A stretch of 64,000 nucleotides of DNA from Octopus bimaculoides (taxonomy: Eukaryota), in the NCBI RefSeq assembly GCF_001194135.2, contig NC_068982.1, positions 116,296,130-116,360,129 on the forward strand. The letters run 5' to 3'. A model generated the notes under the pieces. The model was not told where the DNA came from. It did not search any database and worked only from the letters and a program-made list of their open reading frames with translations. The first letter of the stretch is position 1. The number at the start of each line of letters is the position of its first letter. Positions 6,667 to 62,411 of the stretch are shown here, piece after piece. The translations under genes were made by a program, and so were the position numbers.

Positions 6667-7256
6667 CGAAAGGACCATGGGTAGATAAGGAAGCATTAAA
6701 ACCAATGGAAATTAACCTGAAACCCACCAAATTACCATCGTTAGTTCAACAAGAAAACAATCCACAGTTAACAAAGTCACAGAGCTCCAAAGAATTATCA
6801 GTACCAAAATTTTCCTCAGTCTTTGATGAATGTCAAGAGGAAATGTTCCAACTTGATGATGAGGCTGAAGATCTAATGCCTTTGACTCTCTCTCAAGCAA
6901 CAAAACAAAGGAAAATGTCAAAATCTCATGATGTATTGAATGAAACCATATTAGAGATGTCTCGATCATCTGAAACATGTGAAAAAAGCAAAAGTTCTTT
7001 GTATCGGTTCAAGAGCGATTCAAACTTGAATCATGAGAGGTCCGACATGACCCTTGTAGAGAAAGTTTCCTTATTGAATTTAACGGCGGCAAAAAATTCA
7101 GGAGATGTGAAACCCATGACCACTCGGCGCCAAGTATCCCATGAAAGCTTTGACTGTGACATCTCTGATTCCGAAAGTAAACTGAAGAATTGGTTCTTAA
7201 AAAAGCCAGTATCAATTTCAAAACGAGAGATCAATGCCATTGCACCATTTCCCTGA
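6667..7256 (+). CDS. Uncharacterised gene 1, terminal coding exon (total about 245 aa, ends KNWFLKKPVSISKREINAIAPFP*)
   Basis: Acceptor ttttatgtttcag; 590-nt open frame in AT-rich DNA; Ser/Lys/Glu-rich. C-terminal motif shared with 35152-35427. Confidence 0.85.
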
Positions 7257-38488: not shown

Positions 38489-38581
38489 TCATTCATTTTC
38501 AAATCGATGATAACTGAAGTTGCCGCTATCTTCATCATCTGTGTACTTACTGTTTCCTTTCTGAGTGTGACTTAATATTAC
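38489..38581 (-). CDS. SLC18A: SLC18-like terminal exon: VILSHTQKGNSKYTDDEDSGNFSYHRFENE*
   Basis: Strong acceptor ttcttcttttctccag and phase 0, as required. Starts VIL where VMAT2 has AIL; acidic tail. AATAAA on the minus strand at 38398-38403. Homology is weaker than for the TM exons. Confidence 0.75.
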   Translation of the reverse strand, partial: VILSHTQKGNSKYTDDEDSGNFSYHRFENE

Positions 38582-39559
38582 CTGGAGAAAAGAAGAAGGT
38601 ATGAGTCATTAGGGAAATGATTTTGGCTGTGTGTATGCTCAATGTAGAAAGGGATGTGTTTCTACTTTGTGGGAAGATGGCTGAATCCGTGTCAAGAGGA
38701 GGTGAAATGTTTCCTGGCTTGTGGTATGATGACGAGAAATTACAATAGAATATATAAACAAAAATATTCAAGATGGTGATACTCAGGTAGACAACAATAT
38801 TATCCATTCCCTAGTCATTGAAGGGTCATGGCTTGTTGGCAAAAGTTAAGTGTTGATGCAATACATCAAAGGACAGACAGCATGACAAAGTTCACTTCCA
38901 CACCATATTGTTGACTAATGTTTAATTTTGCAGGTCTGAGGAATCTACAGTGAGCTTACAGCTATTTTACAATACTTGACTGTCTTCTGTATTAGTTCAA
39001 GGGAATTCTTTCAACCAACTATAATGGGCTCTAGTCATAAACTTATTGACTGATATGAAGTTTACCAATAGCATGGAGTAGACACAACTAAAGATGATGT
39101 ACAAGAGTGCATGCAGCTATATAAGAGTTACTGTTCTTTCTCACATCAGCCATGATTGAGCAGACGTATATCCAAAGACGTTCTACTATTGACCATACAG
39201 TTATTTCAGATAAAACTGATCTTAGATTACATTATCCAGTAGCTCTTTTTATGACGATGAGATGTTTTGGCAGCGTATTTTGAATAAATTTGCATAGTGC
39301 AGATAACTACCAAAGGGCATTATTAGCTGCAACTGAAACGGACTTCAGTTTCCAAAGAATTACATTTTGCCAGGATTTATCCTTTTATCTGTTTCAGTTA
39401 TTTAACTGCGGCCATGCTGGAGCATCGCTGTTTGTCAAATTGACCTCAGGACTTCTTTGTAAGCCTAGTACTTAATCTATCGGTCTCTTTTGCCGAACCT
39501 CAAAGTTATGGAGATGTAAACACACCAACATCGGTTGTCAAGCGATGGAGGGGTGACAA

Positions 39560-39603
<44 letters not shown>

Positions 39604-40344
39604 TATATTTATATATACAATGGGTTTCTTTCAGTTTTCATTTACCAAATCCACTCACAAGGCTTTGGTTGGCCAGAGGCTATAGTAGAAGATACCTGCC
39701 TAATGTGGCACGCAGTGGGACTGAACCCAAAACCATCACGTTGGGAAGCAAGCTTCTTACCACACAGCCACTCATAGCATATAGATTTGGTAAAAAGGGA
39801 TATATTACTGGTATTTAATCTATACACTTTACTCAATAAAAGAATTAAAAAGCGCTGAGGAAACTGGTGTGATTTGCACCCAAAAGTGTTTTGTGACAAA
39901 TATCTTTGATATTTCACATTATACATTCTGCATAACCGCTTCAGAGCCAGAAGCATTTCAGTCCTACTCAACACCAGTACTTTTTACACTCCAGGGATGA
40001 AACTCTTAATACTTAGAATGTTTGGATTCAAGGATTTAAGTATTTTTTTCTTTATCTGTAACTTATACATTGATACTTGTCATATCTCATAAGGGATTTC
40101 CTTTGAAGAATCGGGTAAAAATGTATGAGAAGTGATATGTGTGCATACAAATACACATATATACAAACATATAAATACACATATATGTATATGTATATTT
40201 AATAAATAATTATATACACACACACACACATATATAAAAGAAAATGGTACAACAATGCACCAGTATTTACTGGAAATAGCAACACTGCTGTATATTGCAT
40301 TATTTTATATATATATATATACATGCATATATATGTATATACAT

Positions 40345-41110
40345 GCTTCGAAACGCCGGTGTTAAAACGGGGGTAGCTGATGAAGGAAAATGTTCTCTAT
40401 GTGGCTTGTGTGTTTTCTGTACTCTGGTTATTATTATTTTCTTGTCTACGTTTTGTTTGCAATGTCCTGTACCCAGATATGCACCTATATATACAGGTAG
40501 ACGTAGGTATGCACATACCTGTACGTATATATGCATATACTCATTTATTATTTATATATACGTCTTTTCACTTCAGTGTCCCTGTCATTTTTTCTCGCCC
40601 TTCCTTATTTCTTCTGTCCCGCTGCCTCTACCTCTCTCTTCTATCCCCACGTGACCAGTGTTTAGCCAAGCCTGACCTTTGTTGGTTTGGTCGCCGTCCG
40701 TGCAACATCTATATTCCTCCCTGTGCCTGTGAAATCTTGTATCCCTGCCATAAGGCTTTACTTTCACACATGCCAGCTTAATTTAATTTGTCCTTAGTTG
40801 AAAGACACCTGTTGTTATGTCTTGTTATTTGTATTTGTGTAACATTCTCCATTTTAGTTTTTCGTCCTTGTTTGGTATACATTCGCTGCTTTCTTCCAAG
40901 GAATCTAATGCTCTTAGTTTAGTTTTTCCTTGGGGCTGGCCAGATTGGAGCAATCTCGAGTATAACCAGCCAAAATTGCAACGATAATCTGGAACTCGAC
41001 TGAGGAAAGAAAACTCCGAATGACCCGTCCTTGTTTTCTTGGTATCGTCTATCTGGATGTTTTGTTGTCCCTTTTTTGTATCACCTGTCTGGATATTTTA
41101 CGTTTTTGTC
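40345..41110. repeat. Unclassified interspersed repeat (5' part repeated at about 60922-61079)
   Basis: CGAAACGCCGGTGTTAAAACG...GCTGATGAAG...CCCAGATATGCACCTAT present at both loci. Confidence 0.7.
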
Positions 41111-41949
41111 CCATTTTGTATTTGATATATATATCGTCATCATCATCATCGTCGTTTAACGTCCGCTTTCCATGCTAGCATGGGTTGGACGATTTTACTG
41201 AGGACTGGTGCAACTGAAATAATCCAATCTAATTTGGCAGAGTTTCTACAGCTGGATGCCCTTCCTAACGNNNNNNNNNNNNNNNNNNNNNNNNNNNNNN
41301 NNNNNNNNNNNNNNNNNNNNNNNNNNNNNNNNNNNNNNNNNNNNNNNNNNNNNNNNNNNNNNNNNNNNNNTTTTTACTAGGTGGCACTTACTGCCCATAT
41401 TGCATGTTTTTCTTTCATTTATACATTGCATGCATGATTCACACGAGTGTACATTTCATTTCTTTCATTTTTCTTTGTGTGTGTTTTGTGCTACATCTTG
41501 TGGGTGGTTTTCAGTGGCCATCCTGCCTCAGGCGTTCTAACAGATTTCATTTATCGTGCGTTTCTCGCACTGGCGAGGGAGCCCTGTAGTAACGCCGTGC
41601 GCATGCGTAGTCTCATGCATGCGTGGAATTAAACAGCCAAGCGTTCCCGCTTAATTCTACCTCTTTTACGGTCGGCCGACCATGAGCATTGGACGTGTTA
41701 AGCTGTCTCTCTACATCTTTCGGACTTACACTCGACAGCTCGCTTACACCTACAGAAGCTGTAACAACAAGAACTAAAGATGTATATATTTACCACCTGA
41801 ATAAAGTGTTGTTTAGATTGATAGTCTGGAGTTCAGCGTTCCGTTATATTCTTAATTTTATAGTAGGAAAGTCAGGTATACATCTAAAGATGTATAACCC
41901 ACTTTCTACTAAAATTACATACGAGTTGTTGTTTACTCCATATGAGTTG

Positions 41950-42300
41950 TTATTTATCCTGTTGCTCCAATAGATGATGGAATGTATGTATGTATGTATG
42001 TCGGCAGAAACCAAGGCTGTGCTTTACGGACTTTATCAAGTCCTCATTAAAGGCCTGTGATATGCAGGACACTGACTGGGAGAACAATGCCTGTCATCGC
42101 CACGGATGGAGGAAGCAGGTTAAGGAGGGGATCGACACTTTTGAGAGAGCACGTATCCAGCATGAAGAACTTAAGCGAGCTGCGTGAAAGTGCACGGCTC
42201 ATATAGTGAATGGGGAAAGCTTAATCTGCAATGTTTACAGTCGTGTATGCTTGTCAAGAGCAGGGCTCATTAGCCACCAACGGAGCCACAAATGCAAAAT
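41950..42300 (+). mobile_element. RTE(BovB-like) LINE 3' remnant with one C2H2 finger
   Basis: KPRLCFTDFIKSSLKAC...WENNACHRHGWRKQVKEG...CNVYSRVCLSRAGLISHQRSH. Confidence 0.75.
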
Positions 42301-43018
42301 ATAAGTTAGTCCTAGAGCGTACAATGTTCCTGAAGGCCGGCAATGTTCTTCCTCGGTCACGAGTGGACGGCCATCATGTATGCATGTATGTATGAATGAT
42401 TATTTTCCTTTTAAATTCTTGAGAGAGTTCAAGCCGGTCGCTGACAAAGCAATTACACTTTTTGAGTTAAGGGAGTTTCCGATGTTTGTAAATATGCTGT
42501 GGAGTTGGTGTGCTGGTTGTGTTGTCGATGTATACACTCTAGTGCGTGGATCTATTCACCTGAAGAATCTCAGATGGAGAATCTTTGGAATGTCTTACAA
42601 ATCTTCATTGTGCATCATTCTCTTCTGCTCTTTCTTCGAAAAACCTTGTAATTTTAGGTTTTTGTGTAAATTTGTTGGTACATAGCCTAATGCACCCGTG
42701 ATGATAAGTACAAATGAGAATTTTAAAGTCAGGGTACAAGTGATGTAAATTCCGCATTAACTTCCTGGACTTTTGATTGTACATTCACATCCGCTGGGTA
42801 GCTCGCCTCTGCCATAGTGCATGATTTTTGTTCGACCCCAGTATATATTATTTTTTTTTAAAGCCTGGCACTTATTCTGTTGATCTGTTTTGCCGAATCA
42901 CTATATTACGGGTACGCAGAAGAACCACACGCACGCACATATACACACACACATGCACAAATGTAGCAGGTTGACTCGGTTGGGACTAGGCTGACGTTGT
43001 TGTTCTCTGAGAGGTTTT

Positions 43019-43095
43019 ATTGTAACACTTTATCTTGTCGACTATTGTAACACTTTATCTTGTCGACTATTGTAACACTTTATCTTGTCGACTAT
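43019..43095. repeat. 25-bp tandem repeat (TATTGTAACACTTTATCTTGTCGAC x3 plus a partial unit)
   Basis: Read directly from the sequence. Confidence 0.9.
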
Positions 43096-46020
43096 TGTAA
43101 CACTTTTACTGTCGAGTAAAAGCAACCAAAGTCCTCTTTGTTACCTAATGTCTTACCCGGTCCCTACTAACTCCAGTTTACCCTTCTATTATGTCGGCTG
43201 TCTTACTTACCTACCATCCCCTTCCCCATCTGGCATGTGCTACCAGGGTATATAAAGTTGGTTGCGGCTTGTCTCTAACTTGCATTTCTTCATCGATTGC
43301 CTGACTACTTGTTTGCTCTATGTTTGCCTTATAAACCGTACCTGCTGGTTACATCTGTAGTGTGTGATGTTATGTGCTGTCGAAAACTGAAACATATGTA
43401 AGAATTGGAATAAATCAGTATCAAGTTAGGCCCATGTTCTTTTCTCTTATATGCATTTATCTTTTATTTTTCTCTCGTTTCTGTCATTAGACTGCGGCCA
43501 TGTTGGGGCAATGCACTGGAGAACTTTAGTCGAAAATGTTGACTCCAGCACTTTTTAAAAAGACCTTATACTTATTCTATCGATCAGTTTTGCCGAACCG
43601 CAAAGTTATAGGAGCGTAAACACACCAAAACCGGTAGTCAAGCGGTGGTGGTGGACAAATGTAGACATAAAGGGACCTTCCCCATATATATATATATATA
43701 TANNNNNNNNNNNNNNNNNNNNNNNNNNNNNNNNNNNNNNNNNNNNNNNNNNNNNNNNNNNNNNNNNNNNNNNNNNNNNNNNNNNNNNNNNNNNNNNNNN
43801 NNNNNNNNNNNNNNNNNNNNNNNNNNNNNNNNNNNNNNNNNNNNNNNNNNNNNNNNNNNNNNNNNNNNNNNNNNNNNNNNNNNNNNNNNNNNNNNNNNNN
43901 NNNNNNNNNNNNNNNNNNNNNNNNNNNNNNNNNNNNNNNNNNNNNNNNNNNNNNNNNNNNNNNNNNNNNNNNNNNNNNNNNNNNNNNNNNNNNNNNNNNN
44001 NNNNNNNNNNNNNNNNNNNNNNNNNNNNNNNNNNNNNNNNNNNNNNNNNNNNNNNNNNNNNNNNNNNNNNNNNNNNNNNNNNNNNNNNNNNNNNNNNNNN
44101 NNNNNNNNNNNNNNNNNNNNNNNNNNNNNNNNNNNNNNNNNNNNNNNNNNNNNNNNNNNNNNNNNNNNNNNNNNNNNNNNNNNNNNNNNNNNNNNNNNNN
44201 NNNNNNNNNNNNNNNNNNNNNNNNNNNNNNNNNNNNNNNNNNNNNNNNNNNNNNNNNNNNNNNNNNNNNNNNNNNNNNNNNNNNNNNNNNNNNNNNNNNN
44301 NNNNNNNNNNNNNNNNNNNNNNNNNNNNNNNNNNNNNNNNNNNNNNNNNNNNNNNNNNNNNNNNNNNNNNNNNNNNNNNNNNNNNNNNNNNNNNNNNNNN
44401 NNNNNNNNNNNNNNNNNNNNNNNNNNNNNNNNNNNNNNNNNNNNNNNNNNNNNNNNNNNNNNNNNNNNNNNNNNNNNNNNNNNNNNNNNNNNNNNNNNNN
44501 NNNNNNNNNNNNNNNNNNNNNNNNNNNNNNNNNNNNNNNNNNNNNNNNNNNNNNNNNNNNNNNNNNNNNNNNNNNNNNNNNNNAGACCTTCTATTTATAA
44601 ATGTTCTAAAATCTTCACAGCCTTGGTTTTTTTTTTATCTCATTCTGAAAAGAATTTCGTTCGTCTCTCGAATTTGTCAAATATTTAATAAGTTCGAAAG
44701 ACGAACGAAAGCGTTAATATGAAGATATAATAAAATAAAAAAGAAAATTTTTCTCCCAAATTCTGACGACTTTTTTCAATATTCAGTTCTGTACATCACA
44801 CCTAACACACTCTCTCTCTACACACACATATATATTATATATTGTTATATTTCAGGACGGTCATTTTTTTAAAATTAAAAAATAATTTTTTTACCAAATT
44901 AACACACGCACTATATATTCGTTCTTCACTATATATTGTTCTTATTTTATCTTATGTCCATTGTCCGGAAATCTTTCGTCACACATCTGTGACCTCTTCA
45001 GCGACCCTTTCCGTCCACATGTATCCTCCTTCCTGCTCTGCTTTATCCATTCTGTCCTATGATGTGTATTCTTATGTGTGCATGCGTTTGCGTCTCTGTG
45101 TGTGTGTGCGCGTGCGTGTGCTTTCGCGTGTCTATGTTTCACGTGTGCTAGTACGTGTCTATATGGGCGTGCCCTTTATGTTATTGTTGTTCTTAGTGGT
45201 ACTTTCACCCTTCCCTCACCTGCGTATTCTCTTATGTTGCTGCTACTGCTGTTCTTGACTCTTTTGTATCTTTCTGTGTTTGTTCGTTAATGTTGTTGAT
45301 ATCATTGTTGTTATTTTGTTGTTGTTGTTTGTTTTGCTGTTGTTGTTGCGGCCGTTTGTGAAGTTACTATATGTGTGTGTTTGTTTACAATGTTGTTTGT
45401 ATCCCTGCCATTTATATAGCTGTTTTTTTTTTGTTTACTTATTTATCTCTATATCTTATATCTATCATAGGTATGTGCACGTTTGTCTTTTTTATGTGTA
45501 TTACATTTCATTTGTATCCGTGTCCTGTCTTTAGTCGTCGTGTTGCATAGTGTTGTAATGTATGTATGTGTGTGTGGGGGGGGGGGGNNNNNNNNNNGGG
45601 GGGGGGGTGTTATTGTTCCATTCGTGTTTTCTGTTGAGGCTCGGTCTGTCTATTTTATGCCTGTAGCTTCTGTAATCTTTCTAAGTGTCGTGTCAGTTCT
45701 ATGCATTGATAATACCTTAAACTCTATGTTATTAACTGAGCCTCAATGTTCTACTTGAGCATGCTGGTTGAGCACTGACGATCTTTTCCTCTCTTTGAGC
45801 TCCCGTCAATGCCGCGCCTATTTGCTGTCCTATGCTCAGTGCCGTCTCCTCAATGTAAGTTGTTGTTTCGTGTCTGCAACTTTCCTCAGTACACTATAAG
45901 CTATAAACAACATTCCTAATCTTACAGTTAACCTGTGGGTTCACCCTACATACTATACAATTGTTCTCCGTACATGGGGACCTATCGAAGTGATATCTAT
46001 CTATCTATCTATCTATCTAT

Positions 46021-46086
<66 letters not shown>

Positions 46087-46281
46087 GAAAATCTTATATG
46101 TGTTTTAATGGTAATGTAAACCACACATCTGCACATTTGTGTGTGTGTATGTATATATATATATATATATATATTTCACTTGAAGCATTGCGTATTGTTT
46201 GTAAACAATAATAATGAATGTTTTGAATGACATGATTAAATTACATTCAGTGCATTGTTGTGCCATTCTAAACACATTATC

Positions 46282-46323
<42 letters not shown>

Positions 46324-46639
46324 AACAATGATTGCTTCATCTTGACAGATGATAGCCGTCCCATCAACACACACACCACACAAGGGAGTATACTGGACAG
46401 CACTGCTCCCTCACTATTCAATGGTACACCCTCAAATTTACCGTGATACACTTATTTCGAATGTCTACTTTAACATTATTACAACTTAGTGTCCACTCAG
46501 GATATTCTGATATCCTGGGTAGACACTAATATCCTGATATCCTGGCACCAAAGTCTGACGGCGGACCTGCATATATATATATTAATATATATATCCTTTT
46601 TTTTTTCACCCTTTTAAAGCTTAGCCAGGCTTTCAATGG

Positions 46640-46795
46640 CGTAATCCCCAGCTGGACGGGACGCCAGTCCATCGCAGCGTTACTCATTTTTGCCAGCTGA
46701 GTGGACTGGAGCAACGTGAAATGAAGTGTTTTGCTCAAAAACACGTATCGCCCGGTCCAGGAATCGAAACCACAATCTTTCGAATACGCGCCTCC
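46640..46795 (-). mobile_element. SINE with V-domain-like core (related copy about 54325-54455 +)
   Basis: GCTGCGATGGACTGGCGTCCCGTCCAGCTGGG preceded by a tRNA-like head. Confidence 0.6.
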
Positions 46796-46940
46796 ACATA
46801 TCTATATATAATAGAATGTATATACGTAAGCATGCATTTATATGTTTATGTATGAATATCATCAACAACAATGAGTGCACAAATAACATATATATATATA
46901 CGTATGGGTGTAAACCTTTGGTTGTTTTTATTATACTCAC

Positions 46941-47028
46941 TTCCGATTCTGAAGTAGTGCTCACATCACGCAGAAACCAACAAAGTGGGGCATACAATAT
47001 GTTGACAACAGCGATTGACCTCAATAAC
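46941..47028 (-). CDS. SLC18A: SLC18-like exon (TM12): LLRSIAVVNILYAPLCWFLRDVSTTSESE
   Basis: Acceptor ttatcattgggcag, donor gtgagt; 88 nt (phase 2 to 0). Matches VMAT LMxIxGxINIxYAPLCxxLRSPPAKEEKM. Confidence 0.92.
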
Positions 47029-49973
47029 CTGCCCAATGATAAACGAAACACAGTGTCAGTGGAAAACAAGTGACTAATAATAACTTAATTTCTTTTACAC
47101 AGGAAAATCTCATGTTAGGTATGTAGGCGTGTGAGTGTTTGGGTGTGCGGATGTTAGTCTATGCTTTGTTTACTTCTTATTTTTTAACAGAAAAAAATAT
47201 CACTGCTTTAATGTTTTTTTTAATTTTTAATTTCATTATTTTGTTCAAACTACTGAAAAAATGCCACCAACCCTAACCCTAACTTTGATGTTTTGGGGTT
47301 TTGTACAGTTGTGTGAATTTTGCTGTCATTGTGTACAAGTCATAAATATTCTTTTCTACTCTAGGCACAAGGCCCATAATGTTTGGGGAGGGGGCCAGTC
47401 GATTAGATCGACCCCAGTACGCAACTGATATTTTATTTATCGACTCCGAAAGGATGAAAAGCAAAGTTGACCTCGGCAGAATTTGAATTCAGAAGTTAAA
47501 GACAGACGAAATACCGCTAAGCATTTCGCCCGGCTTGCAAACGTTTCTTATTTCTTTATTGCNNNNNNNNNNNNNNNNNNNNNNNNNNNNNNNNNNNNNN
47601 NNNNNNNNNNNNNNNNNNNNNNNNNNNNNNNNNNNNNNNNNNNNNNNNNNNNNNNNNNNNNNNNNNNNNNNNNNNNNNNNNNNNNNNNNNNNNNNNNNNN
47701 NNNNNNNNNNNNNNNNNNNNNNNNNNNNNNNNNNNNNNNNNNNNNNNNNNNNNNNNNNNNNNNNNNNNNNNNNNNNNNNNNNNNNNNNNNNNNNNNNNNN
47801 NNNNNNNNNNNNNNNNNNNNNNNNNNNNNNNNNNNNNNNNNNNNNNNNNNNNNNNNNNNNNNNNNNNNNNNNNNNNNNNNNNNNNNNNNNNNNNNNNNNN
47901 NNNNNNNNNNNNNNNNNNNNNNNNNNNNNNNNNNNNNNNNNNNNNNNNNNNNNNNNNNNNNNNNNNNNNNNNNNNNNNNNNNNNNNNNNNNNNNNNNNNN
48001 NNNNNNNNNNNNNNNNNNNNNNNNNATATATTTAATCCAGGAACATAACTTATATTTTTGAAATACATTTCAAAGAAAAAGAAAATTATTTGCACAATCA
48101 CTTCGACTATTTTGGTGTTTAAAACCAGTGGTTCTTAACATATGCGATAACACGTCTCTGCTGTTGACTCACAATTGTCAACAGCACGCCCAGGGACATT
48201 GGATATTGAGAATTTTGACTTTTCGTTGAAATAAAATGTTTAAACTAGGAACATTACTTATATTTTAAAAATATATTTCAAAGAAAAAGAAGTTTTTGTT
48301 GAAATTAGAATATAAATAAGACACGTATTATAAGTGAGCAAAAAAAAAAAAAAAAGACATGATGTTCATATCCAAATATAATTTCATTTCACAAGACCTT
48401 GTGCCAAAATTGGAAACCATTATATAAGATCTCGGCTTGTTTATGTAATTTACATCAAGAGTTAATGTAAGAAGCATTGCACCAAGCAAATACACTGCAC
48501 AAAATCAGTTTGTTTTATTAAAATAATCTGTAGTTTTATTGTTTTGCTTTTTATTTTCAGTGCACCATACGGCGTTGAACTACGAAAGTCTGAGGATCAC
48601 TATTGTAAATATTGTAAGTGAATTATGTAATTATAGCTAGGGTAACAGGAAAAAATACAAACTTTAAGCAGTGTGCTGCCCTTGTTCTACTTGAATCTTG
48701 GTACATCCGACACTACAAAAACCCTGTGATATCTCTTTTCTATAGGTGTCCTAAGTACGCTTTATTTCATTTAAAGTTTAATATGGATCTCGCTGTTCAT
48801 AACTTAGAGTGAGACATACGACTGTTTATTTGATATACATTGTGACATGATTTGATACTGCTGAAGAAGGTTAGGTTTATATGTTTTATTTGGAAGGTCT
48901 ATTCGTTATATCTTATTTATGGTGTCAATGCAAACGTAGCTTGAAGTATTTATGGCGGTTTAACGTCAAGTCTTGATAGAAGTTGCTAAGTGTTTAGGTG
49001 ACGTATGAATGATACATGTATATGGAAGGTAAATAAGTGAAAAGTGATATCCACTGCATAGAATATTTGTTGTTGAAAGTAATAGCATAGCGGGAAATAT
49101 GGTATAGTAGGAAGGCAGCATAGGCAATTCCAAGAGAAAGAGAGAATAATCGTCCAAGTACTTCATTTATCGACTTTGGATGTTGACTTTAGCGGGATTG
49201 AATTCAGGGTAAAGAGAGTCAGAACAGATATTGCATATCATTCTATCCAACGCTTTAATGACTGCCTATTATCAATAGTAATACGTAATAGTTTTGTATT
49301 TAACTTCCTATATTCTCATAACTATTGACTGCAAGTGTTTGAAGAAATATTAATCGACTAATATTTGATTGGTACATATTTTTAATCCAAGAGGGATAAA
49401 AAGACCAATTCATCCAAGCAGAATATGAATCAGCTAATATTTTATGGGTACTTATTTTTCGACTCTGGACTGGAGGAATAAACAAAAATGCATTATCCCG
49501 GCAGGATTTGAACCCAGGATGATATATGGTTGTTGTTGGCACTCCATCGCTTACGACGTCGAGGGTTCCAGTTAATCTGACCAACGGAACAGCCTGCTCG
49601 TAAAATTAACGTGCAAGTGGCTGAGAGCTCCACAGACACGTGTACCCTTAACGTAGTTCTCGGGGATATTCAGCGTGACACAGAGTGTGACAAGGCTGAC
49701 CCTTTGAATTACAGGCACAACAGAAACAGGAAGTAAGAGTGAGAGAAAGCTGTGGTGAAAGAGTACAGTAGGGTTCGCCACCATCCCCTGCCGGAGCCTC
49801 GTGGAGCTTCAGGTGTTTTCGCTCAATAAACACTCACAACGCCCGGTCTGGGAATCGAAACCGCGAGTCCGCTGCCCTAACCACTGGGCCATTGCGCCTC
49901 CACGATATATGGTATACAGTTCAGTATTCTACTCTACGTCATTGCAGCTCGTCATTGTTGTAAACATTACTTA

Positions 49974-53223: not shown

Positions 53224-53277
<54 letters not shown>

Positions 53278-56200
53278 TGTGTAAAACAAACAATGAAAAG
53301 ACAGTATCAACAATTTATTTAGCATACACGCGTTTCGAATAGCCTGGCACAACGCAAGCGCTGCACATTGCATATTCAATCGAACCTTCATTTGATCGAC
53401 TAAATTGCCAGAGATACAGGGCACGTAGCTGCTATGATTTTCGTTTCAAAGGCAGAATGCTTGTGTTAAATTTTGTATACAGTGAGATAAAGAAGGGAGT
53501 TTACAAACAATAAATTCCAGACCACTGTCTCCTTTCTTATTGTCTAGTGTTTGTGTCATAGACAAGGGGAGGTATCTTTATCAGATGTTCTTAGTTTAAT
53601 GACAGCTATCAGTTGTATTCATCTTTTCAAGTTAGAGTTGCAATTTAATGATGTCCTTAAATGCAACTTAATCGTAGAAGAGAGAATGAATTTGCTAGAA
53701 CTGGATTTGCTTGGATTTATTCAATCCCTATTTTCCTTCATCACCCACACAAACACACACATAAATGAAGGGTTGAACAGAAAGAACAGAAGGACAAAAA
53801 TAACAGTAAGCGGAAATATAGGGAAAACTTGACGATAACATAACAAATGGGAAACTAGACAAAAACTAGATACACAGAACATTTAAAGCCGATTTCCTCG
53901 TCAGTAAATTCCCGGAAAGTCCTAGCAGTTTCACGCTTTTTACCACTGAAACCGCTCGATTCCGTCAAGCGCCAGAGCATTAATCTTCTGGGAAAAGCAA
54001 ACGAACGTATACAAGAACAAAAGCAAGAACCAAGAAAGCTAAAAGAATACGTATATAATACATGATGAAATAATAATACAAGTGCATCAGAAAAAGAATT
54101 ATACATATACAACAGAAAAACGTCTTTCGGCTATACAACAAAAAGAAAGTAATTATACATTTATAACACAAATAAATAACAGAAAGGGTCTTTCGACAAT
54201 TAGACGAACGTAGAAGGCTGGCGCAAGGGAGAAATGGGAAGTCTTAAAAGTCAGCAGGAGAACAGACGAACGTGACCAAATATGTATGTATGTGTGCGTG
54301 TATATTGAGAGAGAGAGAGAGAATGAGGTTACGGTGTTGAATTCATGATCATAAAGTCACAGGTTCGACTTTTGGACCGGGCAGGCCATTGTTTCCTTGA
54401 GCAAGACAGTTCATTTCATGTAACTGAAGTCTACTCGGCTGAAAATGAGTACCAGTCGACTACTGATTGGTGCAACTCTCTCTCTTTTCCTCCACCTGTT
54501 GCATTCTTGATGTTCTGCTGGGTTAAGGGTAGGAGAGATAAGAGTATGTCTATGTCTGCTCGAGACTACATAGGCAACGAAAACAACTAGCAAAAATATG
54601 GTACAAATTACAAATTACACTTGCAAGTGACGTCTATGCCCCCTTCTCTCTCTCATTCTTTCTCCCCCCTCTCTCTCTCTACACACACACACATATACTT
54701 ACACACACAATCACATACAGATATATATGTTCAATAAACGAACGACAAAAGAACAGGAGTCATATGATATTTTCATTAGCTGACAACTATTCCTTCTTTA
54801 AGTAAGCATGCACTCAGTGTTAAATACCAGTGGCAACATCTTATAGCTTCCTCAGAGCCATACATGCACTTAAGGATTGCAAGTAGGTCGGTTCTAATTT
54901 ACTTAGTTGATACTTTATTCTGATTTTCAATAAGATTCTTGTTGAGGGAGTAACTTAAATTAAATAGTAAAACAAAATCTGGTGTGTAGTCTTGAAAAGT
55001 TACATAATCTGGTAATCTTGCATCAAAGTATGCCGAAGTAGATATAGAATTCCCTCTTTGATAGACCCTGGTCCTAATTTAATCCTACCGTCTTAAACAA
55101 TTGCTATTAATAGTAAATGATGCTTGCACTCTTGATGTAAGTCAAGAGATGTTAATCAATTAAAATTAAGTATATAGTAATGAGGATAATACTTATCTAT
55201 AATGACTAATAAAACAAAGGTAAGGAAGCAAAACCGAAGTTTTAAGGAATTAAAATTTATTCAAATTGACATTTGAAGGGAGCGAGTCTGATCAAAATCA
55301 ACTGAGATTAAGACAGTGTAGTTTAACAAACATATGTTAACAAAAAATTTGGGAGTAAGGCAGAAATTTACACACATAAACTCAAACACACGCGGTCGTG
55401 CACGTTAGATCGAGAAGCTGAGTCTATTGTACTAGAAAATGATTTCAAATTTTGGCACAAAGCCAGAAATTTGGATGAAGCTAGTCGGTCACGTTGGGCT
55501 CAGTGCTTGACTGGTGCTTATTTTATTGAACTCGAAAGGATGAAAGGCAATGTCGGCCTCGGTGGAACTTAAACTCATAAAGTAAGGAGTCGAAAGAAAT
55601 ATCGCTAAACATTTTTGTCTGACGTTTCTAACAACTTTGCCAATTTTGCCGTCTTCTCCTCCTATACTATAAATATAATAACTGTAGTTTCACTGCAATT
55701 GGAATTGAGGCGCGCCTAATAACCTAGATGCCTGCATTATTGTGGTAAGATGTCCAGTGGAACAGTATAAAGAACAAGACAAAACAATGGATTAAATAAA
55801 TTGCGAAGATATGAGAGTACACAATATATAGTATTTAACGTTGTAAGGAAGAAATAAAAGAAAAAGAGTGTTAAACATTTCGAACAAAAGCCCTTCGAAG
55901 GGATAGAAGAAAGGGAATTGTTCTTACAAGAGAAGATAAAATAGTCATCGTTTGAGTAAGGGCCCAGGTGGTTTAATTCTTCATGCCAGTCCTTCCACCA
56001 TTCTACCACGTAAGCCATTATTTAACCGGCGTATTATTTAGTTTTAACTTTTCTTTTTCAGAAGCATTTTTTCTTTTGTCGAAACACTACCTATTTCCCC
56101 TCTCTTCCTTTTTAACTCTCTTGGACTCTACTCTTTTGAGATAAAACACTACATAGCTTATACTTAGGGCATTTAAAGGAAACATTAATATATACATTAT

Positions 56201-56451
56201 ACAATTTCAGTAATGGTAGACAGCAACATCGTTAAAAACGTTAAAGTGTAGGACATAATGCCAGTCAGTATTTACTTGTTCATCAGCCTTGGCTGAGTTT
56301 TTGATCATGATCATAGATAGTCTAACTGTGAACTTTTCTTTTTCAGACACAACATACCTAAGACTACACTACCCACTGCATTCTTCCTCTTTAAAGACAT
56401 TCCACCAATGACCACCACCCATCTTATTTTCAAACATAATGTACTCTAGAC

Positions 56452-57280
56452 CAGGGGTTTTCAAACTGTGGTCCCCGGACCACAGGGGGTCCGTGGACAG
56501 CAAATACTTTTTATGGGCAATTTGATTTTATATATGTTTTTTAATCGAAATCTTTTGATTGACAATAAACCGGATCTTTGTGATTTGANNNNNNNNNNNN
56601 NNNNNNNNNNNNNNNNNNNNNNNNNNNNNNNNNNNNNNNNNNNNNNNNNNNNNNNNNNNNNNNNNNNNNNNNNNNNNNNNNNNNNNNNNNNNNNNNNNNN
56701 NNNNNNNNNNNNNNNNNNNNNNNNNNNNNNNNNCAATCACTGACGTCTATTCAGCTGAATACAGTTACTGCTGTTTTCTAAACAGTAGCTTTTGACCGGT
56801 AAGAAAAATGTTATTCCCCGACATATTTCATCCGGTTTAATCGTAATTTATACGCATATATTGTTTATATAATAAATTACGCTGTGCGTATCTGTGTGTG
56901 TATATTTTTCCCATAACCTCACTCATAACCCTAACCCTAACCCTAACCCTAACCCCTTCCTCTTTGTTTACGAACAGTCTAGTTAATCGGAAATGTCAAC
57001 TAACGGGGATTAATACCATATACACCGTCACAGCACTTACTGTTTTCAACTGAATAGACGTCAGTGATTAGTTGAAATTATCGAAATAAGACAATTTTTA
57101 ACGTGAAATAACTTCGAATACAAAATTTATTATCTGTTCTATACCACAAAATATACAAGTATACGAAGTTTGAAAGTGTTTCGGTACCAAAACACTACAT
57201 AAAAAAATGTTGCTCGTCAAATCACAAAGGTCCAATAAACCTATTTGTTAGATACTGTTAAATAAATAAATGTAAAAATA
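56452..57280. mobile_element. Second copy of the hAT MITE (right end missing), interrupted by a nested element
   Basis: CAGGGGTTTTCAAACT TIR after CTCTAGAC; interior matches 21880-21980 on both sides of the insert. Confidence 0.8.
56572..57233. mobile_element. Merlin-like MITE (GG-starting TIRs, 8-bp TSD AATAAACC)
   Basis: GGATCTTTGTGATTTGA / TCAAATCACAAAGGTCC; TSD at 56564-56571 and 57234-57241; internal inverted repeat and (TAACCC)n. Confidence 0.7.
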
Positions 57281-57855
57281 GGCAAACTTTCTTGAGAAGC
57301 GGAACGCATTACAAAAAAATTTCAAGGTCAGTTTTCGTTTGACGTGCCATCCGAAAGTCCCGCGGGTTGCAATTTGTCCTTAACTGGACAAGACCATAAC
57401 AATTTTCCCTTTGCTGATATTAGATTAGACCACAGCGGTCAGGTATTTTATATGAACCTCAGTAGCGTCCGAAACATTCTATTTGTCAACTACTGGGGTC
57501 CAGCTAATTAACTATATCCACAAAAGAAAAAGAAATCGGGCGATGTAAAATAGATATATTTATCAACACCAGAAGGACTAAAAGCAAAGTTGGCCTCAAC
57601 AGGATTTAGACCCTCGACATAAATAGTTACAACTAAATGGTGCATAGCATTTTGCCCTGTGCTCTACCGATTATGCCAACTCATCACACTTAGATCTACA
57701 TATCAACAGAATGTCCTGCCTGTTTCTCTCAGACATATCCTTAAATTGAAGATTATTTTCATCACAAATATCCAGGCTAGTTTGTGTTGCTCTTGCAGCT
57801 TATGAATTAGTAATCAAATACTAGTCACATGTGAAATATATAAACATTGACTTAC

Positions 57856-57901
57856 GTAACAAATCCATACGATTTCACTACATGACCGGAAATAGATGGA
57901 C
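57856..57901 (-). CDS. SLC18A: SLC18-like exon: (G)PSISGHVVKSYGFV(T)
   Basis: Acceptor tttttatatatttgtag, donor gtaagt; 46 nt (phase 1 to 2). Matches VMAT GPSAGGAIAKAIGFPW. Confidence 0.9.
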
Positions 57902-57955
57902 CTACAAATATATAAAAATATACCATTACATACATACATGCATATGTACGTACGT

Positions 57956-58001
<46 letters not shown>

Positions 58002-58084
58002 ATGCGCGCGTGTATGTATGTGTGTATTTTGTTTCGAATTTGTGTGAATGTGTATAGAATAATATATCAGTTGAATAAAGTTAA

Positions 58085-58606
58085 AACAGGTTAAAACAGA
58101 TGACGCATAAAGACTACTATGAAGTCACTGGGAATGGTTCCAGAATGTATAGAAGCCCTTGCTTCGGATCAAGTAGGATGGCGAACAAAGGCGTGGAATG
58201 AAGTAAAAGCATTTGAAGAGGCCAAGATAACACAAGTAAGACTCAAAAGAGATCTAAGGAAGAATGTAACGATCGAGAAGGTAAATGACAATATCCTTTT
58301 TGTGTGCACAGTCTGTGACAGACCATGCCTGTCTTTTATTGGCCTCAAATCTCATCTGCGAACGCATGGAAAACAAACCTCCACCCACTATTCAGCCTAT
58401 ATGTCTGTGCACACTTTTGATTGCAATGTACACCAGAAGGTTTGCAAATCCAACGGAGGCCTCAAGAGACATTTTAAGATCCACAAAGAGCAGAACTTAT
58501 CTGCAGCTCTTGGTGGTTCAAATCGGAGGTGCAATCTATATGGGTGTCTTTTCAGAACATTGTCTGGTTTAAAAAGCCACATCAGATGCCATGATGGTGC
58601 TAAGGT
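58085..58606 (+). mobile_element. RTE(BovB-like) LINE 3' remnant with three tandem C2H2-type fingers
   Basis: IEALASDQVGWRTKAW...AFEEAKI...KRDLRK tail, then CTVCDRPCLSFIGLKSHLRTH and two degenerate fingers; runs into a gap. Confidence 0.75.
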
Positions 58607-58825
58607 NNNNNNNNNNNNNNNNNNNNNNNNNNNNNNNNNNNNNNNNNNNNNNNNNNNNNNNNNNNNNNNNNNNNNNNNNNNNNNNNNNNNNNNNNNNNNN
58701 NNNNNNNNNNNNNNNNNNNNNNNNNNNNNNNNNNNNNNNNNNNNNNNNNNNNNNNNNNNNNNNNNNNNNNNNNNNNNNNNNNNNNNNNTCAATACAAATG
58801 TATTAATACAAATGTATCAATTTCC

Positions 58826-59440
58826 ACAGCATTCTGTTATGTCAATGTCATACTTACACGCTATGATATCGTTAAAGCTCGAGTCGTCATCACTGGTTTC
58901 ATCTCTTCTACTCTGTCTGTCTGTCTGTTTGTCCATATCGGTACCTTGTTGTACCATTCTTATGAATTTATATATATATATATATATATCTGTAACATGC
59001 ATGTACTTTGTATATTTATCTTTGATACTGAAAACAGAGTCTCATTAGATGTACATTTTAAATACTCAATATACCTTAATAGCAATCTGAATAAAACCGT
59101 TTTAACTGTCATTATGCATGTTCGCTTGTTTTGTCGGAATTTATATTTTTCGATGTATAAACGGAGTAAGAATACTGAAAGCATGTTACACTTACTATTC
59201 AGAGTTTCATGCTATCATCACCTGGATTCCATTACGCCGTTGCATTTTGAATTATCAATATCACACCAATATGTTATGTGAACATCACACTATCTTATTA
59301 TATCAATATCACACTATTTTGTCAATACCACAGCATTCTGTTATGTCAATGTCATACTTACACGCTATGATATCGTTAAAGCTCGAGTCGCCATCACTGG
59401 TTTCATCTCTTCTACTCTGTCTGTCTGTCTGTTTGTCCAT
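58826..59440. repeat. About 115-bp direct duplication (58826-58937 and 59328-59440)
   Basis: CCACAGCATTCTGTTATGTC...GTTTGTCCAT twice, with one visible mismatch. Confidence 0.85.
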
Positions 59441-59743
59441 CTATCTCTGTCTGTCTGTCTCTCTCCCTCTCACTCTTCCTTTCACTTCTTATACACATAC
59501 ACATACAACTTCTCTCACACTTATTTATAAAAACAGCGAACAAAAAAGTGCAAAGCACTTGAAAGAAAGGAGGTAATATTGACTTTTCGACAGCGTGTCA
59601 GATAAAAAGACTGAGAAAAGTAAACTGTCCGAAAAAAAAAGTCAATATTTTTTTTCTTTTCCTTAACAGTGTAATACATTGATTTTGTATTCATTCGAAG
59701 AAATAAAAGTTATGATGTTAAAAACAAGTTAGAGAAGGCTTAC

Positions 59744-59863
59744 CTAAAGCGTAGGCCAAGCAAACAGCAATTTGTGATATGGAATAAACTCCACCATACA
59801 CCCCATTATGTCGTCTGTCCACCAATAGAGCCAAGAGAGGCATGAGAGCAGCATCAGTGATAC
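59744..59863 (-). CDS. SLC18A: SLC18-like exon (TM10-TM11): (G)ITDAALMPLLALLVDRRHNGVYGGVYSISQIAVCLAYAL(G)
   Basis: Acceptor cttctcctttatag, donor gtaagc; 120 nt (phase 1 to 1). Matches VMAT [41 protein letters not shown]. Confidence 0.95.
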   Translation of the reverse strand, partial: VSLMLLSCLSWLYWWTDDIMGCMVEFIPYHKLLFAWPTL

Positions 59864-61089
59864 CTATAAAGGAGAAGTAATTAAAACAAATATTTAGTTC
59901 TAAAGAAAATAATGACACTGAAGCATTTTCCAAGGATGTCTTCTTTATGAAGAAAATATTGTCAATTGGGTGATGAGAAATATTTTTTTATTTAATTGAA
60001 ATTTTAGCCGTATAAAGAAAGTAAGTCATGAGCATTAATACAATTATTCTCAAAATAGGCAAGGGAGAAAACACTGGAAATGTCAATTGACAAAAAGAAA
60101 ATGGCAAAATTTAGAGGGGGAGGGAATATGATCTTTAGTTGCTATGCTGAAACTCTGGACATGTTTCGGTATTAATTGTCCTCCTCAGTGACAACACACA
60201 GCTGCCACGACCTTATAACGATTACAAATGTTTTATGTGATTAGAAAATAGTTCATTTGTGTACAAAACTATCGCTGTCAATGACGTATATTCATTTGTG
60301 AAATTAATCCATTTCTCAACAAGATAAATACTGATGTATCTCCATAACAATACTTAGTAATGCACACACTTCGTAATCATACGAAACATGCGCTCAGACT
60401 GAAAATTTTGCAAAACCACTAACATTAATTACAAGAAGTATTACAAGCTAGTTATTTCAAAACTTGATGTCATAGCTTAAATGCAACAAACAAAATACCA
60501 AGATAAAGTATCTACGACAGGAACCAGATCAAAGGTCACATGAAAAATGACGATTTACAGTATCAGACTCATGAGCAGTTTATAAACTATCGAATTGAAG
60601 GTTATAATGCTGATATATATATATATACGTTTATATGCCTTATGTGCGTGTATTTGCGTATCTGTGCACTTATGTGTGCATTTATGTAAGCGCATATGTG
60701 TGTATACATGTATACGTATATAGATACAAGTATATATGTGTGTATGTATGAGCATGTATGTGTGTGCATCTCGTCTGGCCGTAAAGCCTTTTCTGTTTGT
60801 TTTCCTGTCTTGTTTTTTGTCCGCCACTACATTCCTCCATGGCTAGATTTAATTTGCGTATACAAATTTAATCTGCGATCCATGGGACGAGCCGTTTTAG
60901 CGATGCGTCCTGCCCAAGCTCGTCGAAACGCCGGTGTTAAAACGTGGGTGGCTGATGAAGAAGAATGTTCTCTATGTGGCTCGTGTGTTCTCGTCTACGT
61001 TTGTTTGCAATGTCCTGTACCCAGATATGCACCTATACATACAGGTGGATGTCGGTATGCACATACCTGTACGTATATANNNNNNNNNN

Positions 61090-61138
<49 letters not shown>

Positions 61139-61764
61139 ATGCATGTATGCGATTATTGTTTTACCAATTGAATGTTTTTATAATTACTAAGAATATTACA
61201 AAAACAAACCTGATATACAAAGAATATCGCGAAGTAAATATAGCGCACCAATTTACTCGTTTACTTTCACGCTTGACTGATTCCTAAACGATGACAAAAT
61301 TCTATATCAAACGAAAATAAATCTCTTCACTATAGACTTCTATCAATTTACACCCTACAAACATACTTTCTTCTTATCTTCCTCGATTCCATTGTCTTCC
61401 AACACCACGTCTAATTATCATTCACATTACTCCACCTTCAAAAATAACCTACCAAAGATGATATAAAACGAGAAAGATCGAATGTAAATCACAGTATGGT
61501 GACGGCAAGCAAACCGAAACTTTGAAGTCACTGATGACATTTTCCTTTTAAAAGTTCACACACATACACGCACACGCACGCACGCACGCACGCACACCGT
61601 TTTTTAATATAATTTTATATTTGCGAAATATATATATACATTTTTATTTGCAAGTTTCACACAAATGAAAGACAAAGTGAAATAAACATGCATCAGTGCA
61701 AGCCAGTAAAACAATTAGTAGTTGTAAATAAAAATTATAGTGGTATGAAATTACTACGACTTAC

Positions 61765-61828
61765 CTAAGCCCAGGCCGATTCCAAAGTGTGGCATTATGA
61801 GTTGTGATATTGATGATGCAAAAGGCAA
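61765..61828 (-). CDS. SLC18A: SLC18-like exon: LPFASSISQLIMPHFGIGLGL(G)
   Basis: Acceptor ttgtatattttccag, donor gtaagt; 64 nt (phase 0 to 1). Matches VMAT [22 protein letters not shown]. Confidence 0.93.
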
Positions 61829-62359
61829 CTGGAAAATATACAAGAACGATACACCTACTATCTGAAATACATTGTCTTTGACAGACTATTCACGGCGGGG
61901 GTGGAGTTGGGGGAATTGCTCGACCTGTTATAAATAGCAGTTAAATTTCCCTCGAATCCAGCCCTACCGTTTTAAATACATAAAAAGATACGTTCTGGCA
62001 ATGCAATTATTCTTTTGCAAGGAGATGGGGATGGTCATGACTGGAATGCTTTTGATCATAGGCCTACTAGGTCAGAGTTTACCAAGAGCTTATTAACAGT
62101 TGTCATTTATTTATTCAGGCTTTTGTGTGGATAATTAAGGTTTGCTTGACTTTTGAGTGATCAGTGATATTTGACAACGGGTGGTCAGTTCAATAAGTTT
62201 TCTTTCGAAGAGAGAACAGCCGACACTATTGACTCCGCTACTTCACTGGGATTTATTTTATCGCTTCCGTGGTCACGATGTCATTCTTTTTTTTTTAAGA
62301 GAGGATCACATTAATAGTTGTGTGAATTTGATTATAATGATCGGAGAGAAGATACTTAC

Positions 62360-62411
62360 AAAGAAACAACACAGTCCAATAATAAACATACAGCAGAGTG
62401 TACATATCCAC
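62360..62411 (-). CDS. SLC18A: SLC18 vesicular amine transporter-like, internal exon (TM9): (R)WICTLCCMFIIGLCCFF
   Basis: Acceptor ttttaccatattttccag, donor gtaagt; 52 nt (phase 2 to 0). Aligns to VMAT2 (R)WLCALLGMIIVGVSILC. Upstream exons were not found in the window. Confidence 0.9.

What the first reader, a model, noticed from the sequence alone, without database searches (positions are those of the whole stretch)
38489..62411. Orphan SLC18 vesicular transporter with TM11 Asp replaced by Gln (portabella-like) in a probable cephalopod
Seen: six phase-compatible exons give ...PHFGIGLGLGITDAALMP...VYGGVYSISQIAVCLAYALGPS.... The TM10 Asp is kept (codon 59853-59855), but the TM11 position is CAA/Gln (59772-59774). 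Established: VMAT2 and VAChT both have Asp at these positions (human VMAT2 D399/D426; YAIADV/YAIADI). From memory, Drosophila portabella (prt) is an orphan SLC18 of mushroom bodies with unknown substrate and has Gln at the TM11 site. Inference: this is neither VMAT nor VAChT but a prt-clade transporter, implying an unidentified vesicular transmitter system, possibly in cephalopod learning centres such as the vertical lobe.
Basis: partly seen in the sequence, partly recalled or inferred. Interest (0 to 1): 0.85.

Follow-up and report, generated by a model that had tools for sequence, protein, structure and literature searches.

The report
Portabella-type orphan vesicular transporter gene end
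The window holds the last six exons of an expressed gene for a vesicular amine-type transporter of the little-studied "portabella" branch, known only as an orphan in fly mushroom bodies; here it turns up in a mollusc, and its cargo is unknown.

Summary
Six minus-strand exons (62411-62360, 61828-61765, 59863-59744, 57901-57856, 47028-46941, 38581-38489) have AG/GT borders. RNA contigs from four runs join them exactly as proposed, so every N gap is intronic. They encode the C-terminal 153 aa (TM9-TM12 plus tail) of an SLC18 transporter. The rest of the gene lies beyond base 64000.

The TM10 Asp (GAT 59855-59853) is kept. The TM11 position is Gln (CAA 59774-59772) in DNA runs and RNA contigs.

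The Gln is not private. 64 of the best 150 homologues share Asp/Gln, including fly proteins named "portabella". VMAT and VAChT homologues have Asp there. The fragment carries all six portabella-diagnostic residues in its span (H388, A400, L405, A407, Q426, V429). It falls in the portabella clade in 83% of NJ bootstraps, and its sister group is purely portabella-like in 100 of 100.

Clade members keep the VMAT proton-coupling and charge residues (D33, K138, R189, E312, D399) but differ at gate and pocket sites.

"Cephalopod" and "vertical lobe" remain untested: nearest named relatives are bivalves and gastropods. This is a new member of a known orphan family, of moderate interest.

The parts
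62360..62411 (-). Exon (52 nt) encoding TM9 (R)WICTLCCMFIIGLCCFF. It is the first exon of the gene inside the window and starts with the third base of an Arg codon.
   Evidence: tblastn to hVMAT2 350-370; AG/GT borders; RNA joint 61828->62360 in four runs, and a loose end behind 62413 shows an upstream exon that is not in the window.
61765..61828 (-). Exon (64 nt) encoding LPFASSISQLIMPHFGIGLGL(G), the start of TM10. It contains His at the hVMAT2 N388 position.
   Evidence: RNA joint to the upstream exon and a loose end that continues into exon 59863-59744; H388 is PRT-diagnostic.
59744..59863 (-). Exon (120 nt) encoding (G)ITDAALMPLLALLVDRRHNGVYGGVYSISQIAVCLAYAL(G): TM10, the loop and TM11.
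   Evidence: held in RNA and DNA runs; raw RNA reads match at 99% or better.
59853..59855 (-). GAT codon: the conserved TM10 Asp (hVMAT2 D399).
   Evidence: Sequence; alignment to VMAT2; present in RNA contigs (loose end).
59772..59774 (-). CAA codon: Gln at the TM11 position that is Asp in VMAT and VAChT (hVMAT2 D426).
   Evidence: Sequence; alignment; the RNA contig loose end contains ...TCACAAATTGCT....
57856..57901 (-). Exon (46 nt) encoding (G)PSISGHVVKSYGFV(T).
   Evidence: RNA contigs cover it and run on into both neighbouring exons.
46941..47028 (-). Exon (88 nt) encoding (T)LLRSIAVVNILYAPLCWFLRDVSTTSESE (TM12).
   Evidence: RNA contigs run on into exons 57901-57856 and 38581-38489.
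38489..38581 (-). Last coding exon: VILSHTQKGNSKYTDDEDSGNFSYHRFENE plus the TGA stop (38491-38489). This is the acidic cytoplasmic tail.
   Evidence: junction to exon 47028-46941 shown by the RNA loose end; the tail is similar in relative P0005.

Best explanation
This is the 3' part (TM9 to the C-terminus, 153 aa) of an intact, spliced and expressed gene for an SLC18-family transporter of the portabella (PRT, 'SLC18A4') clade. That clade is a third branch beside VMAT and VAChT. Here the gene sits in a mollusc genome, possibly a cephalopod.

Inferred mechanism: like its relatives, it is a 12-helix major-facilitator H+/substrate antiporter of secretory or synaptic vesicles, driven by the vesicular proton gradient.

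Full-length clade members keep the VMAT residues for proton coupling and cation binding (D33, N34, K138, Q142, R189, E312, Y341, D399, D411, Y433). The cargo is therefore probably a protonatable amine.

The clade has fixed changes at sites that shape the gates and pocket in VMAT2:
- D426Q: one of the four cavity acids becomes neutral, so K138 loses a partner.
- N388H: this position partners E312.
- N305T/S: this position partners D399 and Y341.
- F429V: inner cytosolic gate.
- F135L: lumenal gate.
- A337D and S340G: TM8.

The substrate and/or proton stoichiometry are therefore expected to differ from both VMAT and VAChT. The cargo is unknown.

Shown here: gene structure, expression, residues and clade membership. 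Inferred: vesicular location, antiport and an amine-like cargo.
For: - Gene model and splice sites. All five junctions and both key codons are present in RNA contigs of four runs.
- SLC18 homology: VMAT2 E=1e-13 and VAChT E=1e-8 for 53 aa; Pfam MFS_1 above its cut-off.
- D/Q state in 64 of the top 150 representatives, and in all of the best hits.
- Named members include bivalves, gastropods, tardigrade, crayfish, scorpion, centipede and insects, and dipteran proteins named portabella.
- NJ bootstraps: PRT clade 92/100 on full-length sequences and 83/100 with the window included. The window's sister group is PRT-only in 100/100 replicates.
- 6 of 6 diagnostic residues fall in the window. D337, G340 and T305 are present in the 72%-identical relative L001.
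- The coupling residues are conserved across the clade.
- The roles of D426, K138, D33, N388-E312, N305-Y341-D399, F429 and F135 in VMAT2 are described in PMC10959523.
Against: - Only about a third of the protein is in the window, so the N-terminal residues (D33, K138, R189, E312 and five diagnostic sites) are unseen for this organism.
- The fragment alone scores the same against a VMAT profile as against ecdysozoan PRTs (150.5 vs 149.8 bits).
- C-terminal-only bootstrap support for the Gln clade is 58%, and falls to 27% without the TM11 motif.
- Trees are NJ only. No ML tree and no SLC18B1 outgroup were used.
- No transport, localisation or tissue data exist here.
- Read depth in three recent RNA runs is very low: 4 reads in roughly 6% samples.
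Confidence: 0.8

Rival explanations
1. It is a redundant or divergent VMAT. Despite Gln at TM11 it loads classical monoamines, so no new transmitter system is implied.
For: - The closest solved structures are VMAT2, not VAChT. Physella PRT-like P0013 scores 283 bits against VMAT2 and 163 against VAChT, and the window fragment gives 1e-13 against 1e-8.
- All of D33, K138, R189, E312, Y341, D399 and Y433 are retained in the clade.
- Databases auto-name these proteins 'synaptic vesicular amine transporter-like'.
Against: - Eleven clade-fixed differences from both VMAT and VAChT fall at or near gate and pocket positions.
- Canonical D/D VMATs occur in molluscs (Haliotis P0015), beside D/Q proteins in other molluscs such as Mytilus P0017 and Physella P0013. 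Mytilus is also reported to have a VMAT.
- The clade has been kept separate across arthropods, tardigrades, molluscs and an annelid, which argues for a distinct role.
- From memory, not verifiable here: the original fly study found no transport of known transmitters, and Kenyon cells do not make monoamines.
Confidence: 0.2
2. It is a lineage-specific mollusc duplicate of VMAT that acquired Gln convergently, and is not an orthologue of insect portabella.
For: C-terminal-only support for a single Gln clade is modest (58%). The fragment's mean identity to VMATs (43.0%) is about the same as to PRT-like proteins (43.7%).
Against: - Six further diagnostic states are shared with insect PRTs in the same fragment.
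- Three more are shared in the close relative L001.
- Full-length bootstrap for the joint clade is 92%.
- The window never pairs with a VMAT in 100 replicates.
Confidence: 0.07
3. It is a decaying or non-functional gene copy (pseudogene), or an assembly artefact across the gaps.
For: The region has many N gaps and repeats. A related species' transcript skips the 52-nt TM9 exon and is frameshifted. Read depth is low in three RNA runs.
Against: - The frame is open through all six exons to a conserved acidic tail.
- All junctions are canonical and found in RNA from several studies, and no skipped form was seen in this organism.
- Functional residues D399, D411, R413 and Y433 are conserved.
Confidence: 0.03

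Closest known systems
Drosophila portabella (prt, CG10251; listed as SLC18A4 in PMC13205867), the orphan mushroom-body vesicular transporter
   Same: - Same clade in the NJ trees.
- Same Asp(TM10)/Gln(TM11) state, within the motif YA[IL]xQxAV[SC]LAY.
- Same diagnostic residues H388, A400, L405, A407 and V429.
- The substrate is unknown in both.
   Different: - Only about 35-50% identical to PRT-like proteins in general over TM9-TM12.
- It lies in the mollusc subclade (AQL/SQI AVCLAY rather than QQTSVSLAY).
- It lacks the long extensions of the fly proteins (about 590-670 aa).
- Expression site and phenotype are unknown here.
VMAT1/VMAT2 (SLC18A1/A2); human VMAT2 structures such as PDB 8UCJ and 8JSW
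   Same: Same fold and family. It aligns without gaps to hVMAT2 356-478 and keeps D399, D411, R413 and Y433. Clade relatives also keep D33, K138, R189, E312 and Y341.
   Different: It differs by D426Q, N388H, S400A, I405L, G407A and F429V. In relatives it also differs by F135L, M169L, P236Y, N305T/S, A337D and S340G. It does not group with the mollusc VMAT (Haliotis P0015).
VAChT (SLC18A3); PDB 9KKN, 8XTW
   Same: SLC18 family, with the TM10 Asp.
   Different: VAChT has Asp at TM11 within YAIADISYSLAY, and His at the Y341 position. The window scores 112 bits against a VAChT profile and 167 against the PRT profile.
SLC18B1 (vesicular polyamine transporter)
   Same: It is another orphan-turned-assigned SLC18-related MFS vesicular transporter, and a precedent for unconventional amine cargo.
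   Different: It is a much more distant branch and was not compared here. All the window's best hits are in the VMAT/VAChT/PRT group.

Membership tests
SLC18 vesicular amine transporter family (MFS) | Significant sequence similarity to VMAT and VAChT over the transmembrane core, with an MFS domain | tested here: met
   PDB phmmer gives VMAT2 1e-13 and VAChT 1e-8 for 53 aa, without gaps. Pfam MFS_1 scores 39.5 bits against a cut-off of 33.4. There are 772 homologues at E<=1e-3.
SLC18 vesicular amine transporter family (MFS) | Conserved TM10 Asp (hVMAT2 D399) and the LVD.RH loop (D411) | tested here: met
   ITDAAL and LVDRRH are present.
SLC18 vesicular amine transporter family (MFS) | N-terminal half residues D33 (TM1), K138 (TM2), R189 (TM4) and E312 (TM7) | not testable with these tools
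   These exons lie beyond base 64000. The residues are present in all full-length clade relatives, and E312 is present in relative L001.
SLC18 vesicular amine transporter family (MFS) | Vesicular localisation and H+-coupled antiport | not testable with these tools
   Requires experiment.
Portabella / PRT (SLC18A4) clade | Gln (rarely Glu) instead of Asp at the TM11 site, with the TM10 Asp kept | tested here: met
   CAA at 59774-59772. The portabella-named proteins P0192, P0231 and P0248 and the Drosophila proteins P0200 and P0282 are all D/Q.
Portabella / PRT (SLC18A4) clade | Other clade-fixed residues within TM9-TM12: H388, A400, L405, A407, V429 | tested here: met
   All five are present in the window, which makes 6 of 6 with Q426.
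Portabella / PRT (SLC18A4) clade | Clade-fixed residues in the N-terminal two thirds: L135, L169, Y236, D337, G340 (and T/S305) | not testable with these tools
   These lie outside the window. D337, G340 and T305 are present in the 72%-identical relative L001.
Portabella / PRT (SLC18A4) clade | Phylogenetic grouping with named portabella proteins, apart from VMAT and VAChT | tested here: met
   NJ bootstrap is 92/100 on full-length sequences without the window and 83/100 with the window. The sister group is PRT-only in 100/100 replicates. Caveat: NJ only, and C-terminal columns alone give 58%.
Portabella / PRT (SLC18A4) clade | Expression in associative-learning neuropil (fly Kenyon cells) | not testable with these tools
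   The RNA runs hold the transcript, but samples and tissues are coded.
VMAT (SLC18A1/A2) | Asp at TM11 (D426) facing K138, and the YAIADVAFC motif | tested here: not met
   Gln, within YSISQIAVC.
VMAT (SLC18A1/A2) | Groups with bilaterian VMATs, including the mollusc VMAT | tested here: not met
   It was never sister to VMAT-type sequences in 100 replicates.
VAChT (SLC18A3) | The YAIADISYS(L/F)AY motif and best similarity to VAChT | tested here: not met
   The motif is absent. The HMM score is 112 bits, against 167 for PRT and 150 for VMAT. PDB E-values are weaker than for VMAT2.
SLC18B1 (VPAT) | Grouping with SLC18B1 orthologues | not tested
   No SLC18B1 anchor was among the sequences retrieved. 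All the best hits are of A-type (VMAT/VAChT/PRT).

The most novel reading that the evidence does not exclude
The portabella branch may be an ancient, protostome-wide third vesicular amine-type transporter, found in molluscs, an annelid, tardigrades and all major arthropod groups. Its cavity charges are rearranged: the TM11 acid is lost, while a TM8 Asp and a His next to E312 are gained. On this reading it loads a still unidentified small-molecule transmitter, and this gene is its representative in a large-brained mollusc. That would make an unrecognised transmitter system directly testable outside insects.
Probability: 0.3. Interest if true: 0.8.

Novelty: new member of a known kind. Interest (0 to 1): 0.5.

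Why it matters
Portabella has remained an orphan since 2011 and is discussed almost only for insects. Broad surveys of monoamine genes treat SLC18 as VMAT plus VAChT (PMC10244343). A 2026 bivalve study states that protostomes have a single VMAT and uses portabella only as an outgroup.

The data here show that databases already hold D/Q portabella-type genes from bivalves and gastropods, from an annelid (with Glu), and from tardigrades, chelicerates, myriapods and crustaceans. All are auto-named "VMAT-like". One such gene is expressed in this mollusc.

Three consequences follow:
- "VMAT" markers in mollusc or cephalopod cell atlases may need to be told apart from PRT.
- The clade's fixed substitutions give concrete mutagenesis targets for de-orphanising PRT.
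- A large, accessible nervous system could be used to look for the cargo.

Tried and rejected
Short stretches around single exons were used instead.
- The first two word-indexed protein searches returned only exon-sized fragments and no protein of the source organism. The full-length protein of this organism could not be obtained. A 1580-nt RNA contig exists, but its sequence cannot be printed.
- L001, the relative's contig, adds only TM7-TM8 and skips the TM9 exon.
- Exact look-ups of two window ORFs, made to identify the organism, found nothing. Run and organism names are coded, so "cephalopod" stays unverified.
- The original portabella paper (PMC3201771) is not held, and a look-up of the SLC18 review under a PMC id recalled from memory also found nothing. 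One literature search on "prt" was useless.
- A-to-I editing of the CAA codon (Gln to Arg) was considered. The four raw reads and all RNA contigs show CAA, but depth is too low to exclude minor editing.
- Structure prediction was not run. The fragment is a third of a membrane protein, and the tools return no coordinates for measuring pocket geometry.
- The pseudogene, convergent-duplicate and plain-VMAT readings were considered (see rivals).
Full report
**1. Observation**

A tblastn with human VMAT2 was used as a guide. The VMAT2 sequence was verified as 100% identical to PDB 8UCJ. It found six minus-strand segments co-linear with VMAT2 residues about 350-478, plus a tail.

Reading the borders gives these exons:

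| Exon | Window position | Length |
|---|---|---|
| A | 62411-62360 | 52 nt |
| B | 61828-61765 | 64 nt |
| C | 59863-59744 | 120 nt |
| D | 57901-57856 | 46 nt |
| E | 47028-46941 | 88 nt |
| F | 38581-38489 | 93 nt, ending in TGA |

All six have AG...GT borders and compatible phases. They give a 153-aa C-terminal peptide.

**2. Gaps and expression**

The scan program asked that continuity across the N gaps be tested first.

- Logan RNA contigs (786-1580 nt) from four runs of the same organism contain the joint 61828->62360, with GT..AG on the minus strand.
- At every other exon end, the contigs continue with exactly the sequence of the next exon (B-C; C-D and D-E; D-E and E-F).
- All gaps are therefore intronic and the mRNA frame is continuous.
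- The RNA sequence includes both the GAT and the CAA codons.
- The genomic 201 bases around exon C are held in full by 11 DNA runs from several studies. The exon is held by at least nine RNA runs, and partly by runs of a related species.
- In three deep runs from 2026, only four reads fell on the exon in roughly 6% samples. All were 99% or more identical and showed no A-to-G change.
- The RNA contigs continue upstream of 62411 into ...GFGVIARSLGR. That sequence is not in the window. The window therefore holds only TM9-TM12 and the tail; the first two thirds of the gene lie beyond base 64000.

**3. What it is**

- The fragment is an SLC18 protein. PDB hits are VMAT2 at 1e-13, VMAT1 at 2e-12 and VAChT at 1e-8, aligned without gaps, with Gln opposite D426. 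Pfam MFS_1 scores above its cut-off.
- An exhaustive HMMER search of 1.84 billion representatives gave 772 homologues.
- Among the best 150, 74 are Asp/Asp (VMAT motif YAIADVAFC..., VAChT motif YAIADISYS...). 64 are Asp/Gln, with the motif YA[IL]xQxAV[SC]LAY, and 5 are Asp/Glu. Every one of the best hits to the window is Asp/Gln.
- Exon-sized fragments and a 72%-identical transcript from other organisms also have Gln. The Gln is therefore neither private nor an error.

Named Asp/Gln members:
- Gastropods: Physella, Biomphalaria.
- Bivalves: Mytilus, Ruditapes, Sinanodonta, Mya.
- Tardigrade: Hypsibius.
- Chelicerate and myriapod: Centruroides, Strigamia.
- Crustaceans: Darwinula, Cherax.
- Many insects.

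A spider and the annelid Owenia have Glu at this site.

A search with the mosquito member returned close dipteran orthologues that NCBI names "putative mushroom body vesicular transporter portabella". These, and the D. simulans and D. erecta orthologues, are Asp/Gln.

**4. Phylogeny and signatures**

NJ trees used Kimura distances.

| Data set | Grouping tested | Bootstrap |
|---|---|---|
| Full-length, 450 columns | Gln clade plus the Owenia Glu variant | 92/100 |
| Full-length, 450 columns | Mollusc subclade | 95/100 |
| Full-length, 450 columns | VAChT | 100/100 |
| Window plus relative's TM7-TM12 composite added | PRT clade | 83/100 |
| Same | Mollusc subclade including the window | 75/100 |
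| Same | Window's sister group consists only of PRT-like sequences | 100/100 |
| Fragment alone, 125 columns | Gln clade | 58% |
| Fragment alone, TM11 motif removed | Gln clade | 27% |

The fragment on its own is weak evidence. Its profile scores are 167.5 bits (all PRT-like), 149.8 (ecdysozoan PRT only), 150.5 (VMAT) and 112.4 (VAChT).

Independent support comes from clade-fixed residues. These are present in at least 80% of PRT-like sequences and in at most 10% of VMAT and VAChT sequences. They are F135L, M169L, P236Y, A337D, S340G, N388H, S400A, I405L, G407A, D426Q and F429V. The window has all six that fall within its span. The 72% relative also has D337, G340 and T305.

**5. Mechanism**

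Full-length clade members keep D33, N34, K138, Q142, R189, E312, Y341, D399, D411 and Y433. This is the proton-coupling and cation-binding core of VMAT2.

The VMAT2 structural literature (PMC10959523) gives these roles for the positions that differ:
- D426 is one of four acids lining the cavity. It lies in the TM1/4/11 polar network, in which K138 sits between D33 and D426.
- N388 pairs with E312.
- N305, Y341 and D399 form a third polar group.
- F429 is part of the inner cytosolic gate.
- F135 is part of the lumenal gate.

The PRT clade has changed exactly these accessory positions and has added an Asp in TM8.

My reading is a vesicular H+/amine-type antiporter with a re-shaped and re-charged pocket. 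It would therefore have a different cargo and/or proton stoichiometry. The vesicular location, the antiport and the amine nature of the cargo are all inferences.

**6. Comparison with what is known; novelty**

Portabella is a known orphan, and is still called that in 2021-2026 papers. I found no paper in the searchable library that describes PRT orthologues outside insects. A major survey splits SLC18 into VMAT and VAChT only. A bivalve study reports a single VMAT in protostomes. The original 2011 paper could not be read, so I cannot exclude that it noted wider orthologues.

The finding is a new member of a known kind, with a useful side result: the clade is protostome-wide and mis-named as VMAT-like.

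**7. Open points**

- "Cephalopod" could not be verified. Organism names are coded, no named cephalopod protein was retrieved, and the nearest named relatives are bivalves and gastropods at 44-50% identity.
- The tissue of expression is unknown.
- The vertical-lobe idea is untested.

Noticed in passing
window 14528-15340 (+): A 270-aa ORF with a reverse-transcriptase domain (RVT_1, E=3e-20) followed by a PHD-type finger. This is a retroelement fragment.
   Followed up: partly
window 58119-59048 (+), inside the intron between exons 59863-59744 and 57901-57856: A 309-aa ORF on the opposite strand with weak C2H2 zinc-finger matches, interrupted by the N gap at 58607-58788. It is probably part of a mobile element.
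   Followed up: partly
window ~62029-62062 (intron between exons 62411-62360 and 61828-61765): A piece of about 30 nt is present in many unrelated RNA contigs, some at high depth (up to about 450x in X19). It looks like a short dispersed repeat carried in other transcripts, not part of this mRNA.
   Followed up: no
window 59440-59312 and 59041-58820 (-): Two near-identical copies of a segment, reading MDKQTDRQSRRDETSD..SSFNDIIACKYDIDITECCG in one frame, lie close to the 58607-58788 gap. This is a local duplication or repeat.
   Followed up: no
L001:1-700 (Logan contig of run SRR8281665, a 72%-identical relative): The transcript contig joins the TM8 exon directly to the exon homologous to 61828-61765. 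It skips the 52-nt TM9 exon and so shifts the frame. This is either a non-productive isoform or an assembly artefact. The skip was not seen in the window's organism.
   Followed up: partly
Proteins P0006, P0024, P0131, P0148 (not in the window): Within or near the PRT clade, a spider (Trichonephila) and an annelid (Owenia) have Glu at the TM11 site. Starfish (Acanthaster) SLC18-like paralogues have Thr there, and Arg at the Q142 position. The TM11 site therefore varies among non-VMAT/VAChT branches.
   Followed up: partly
window 6705-7256 (+): A 183-aa Ser/Lys-rich ORF with no Pfam match and no exact record in the gene collection. It could be an exon of a neighbouring gene or a chance ORF.
   Followed up: partly
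Literature (PMC12240821): The bobtail-squid cell atlas uses a marker called 'Vmat2-2'. The numbering suggests that more than one VMAT-like gene is annotated in that cephalopod, and one of them could be the PRT-type paralogue.
   Followed up: no
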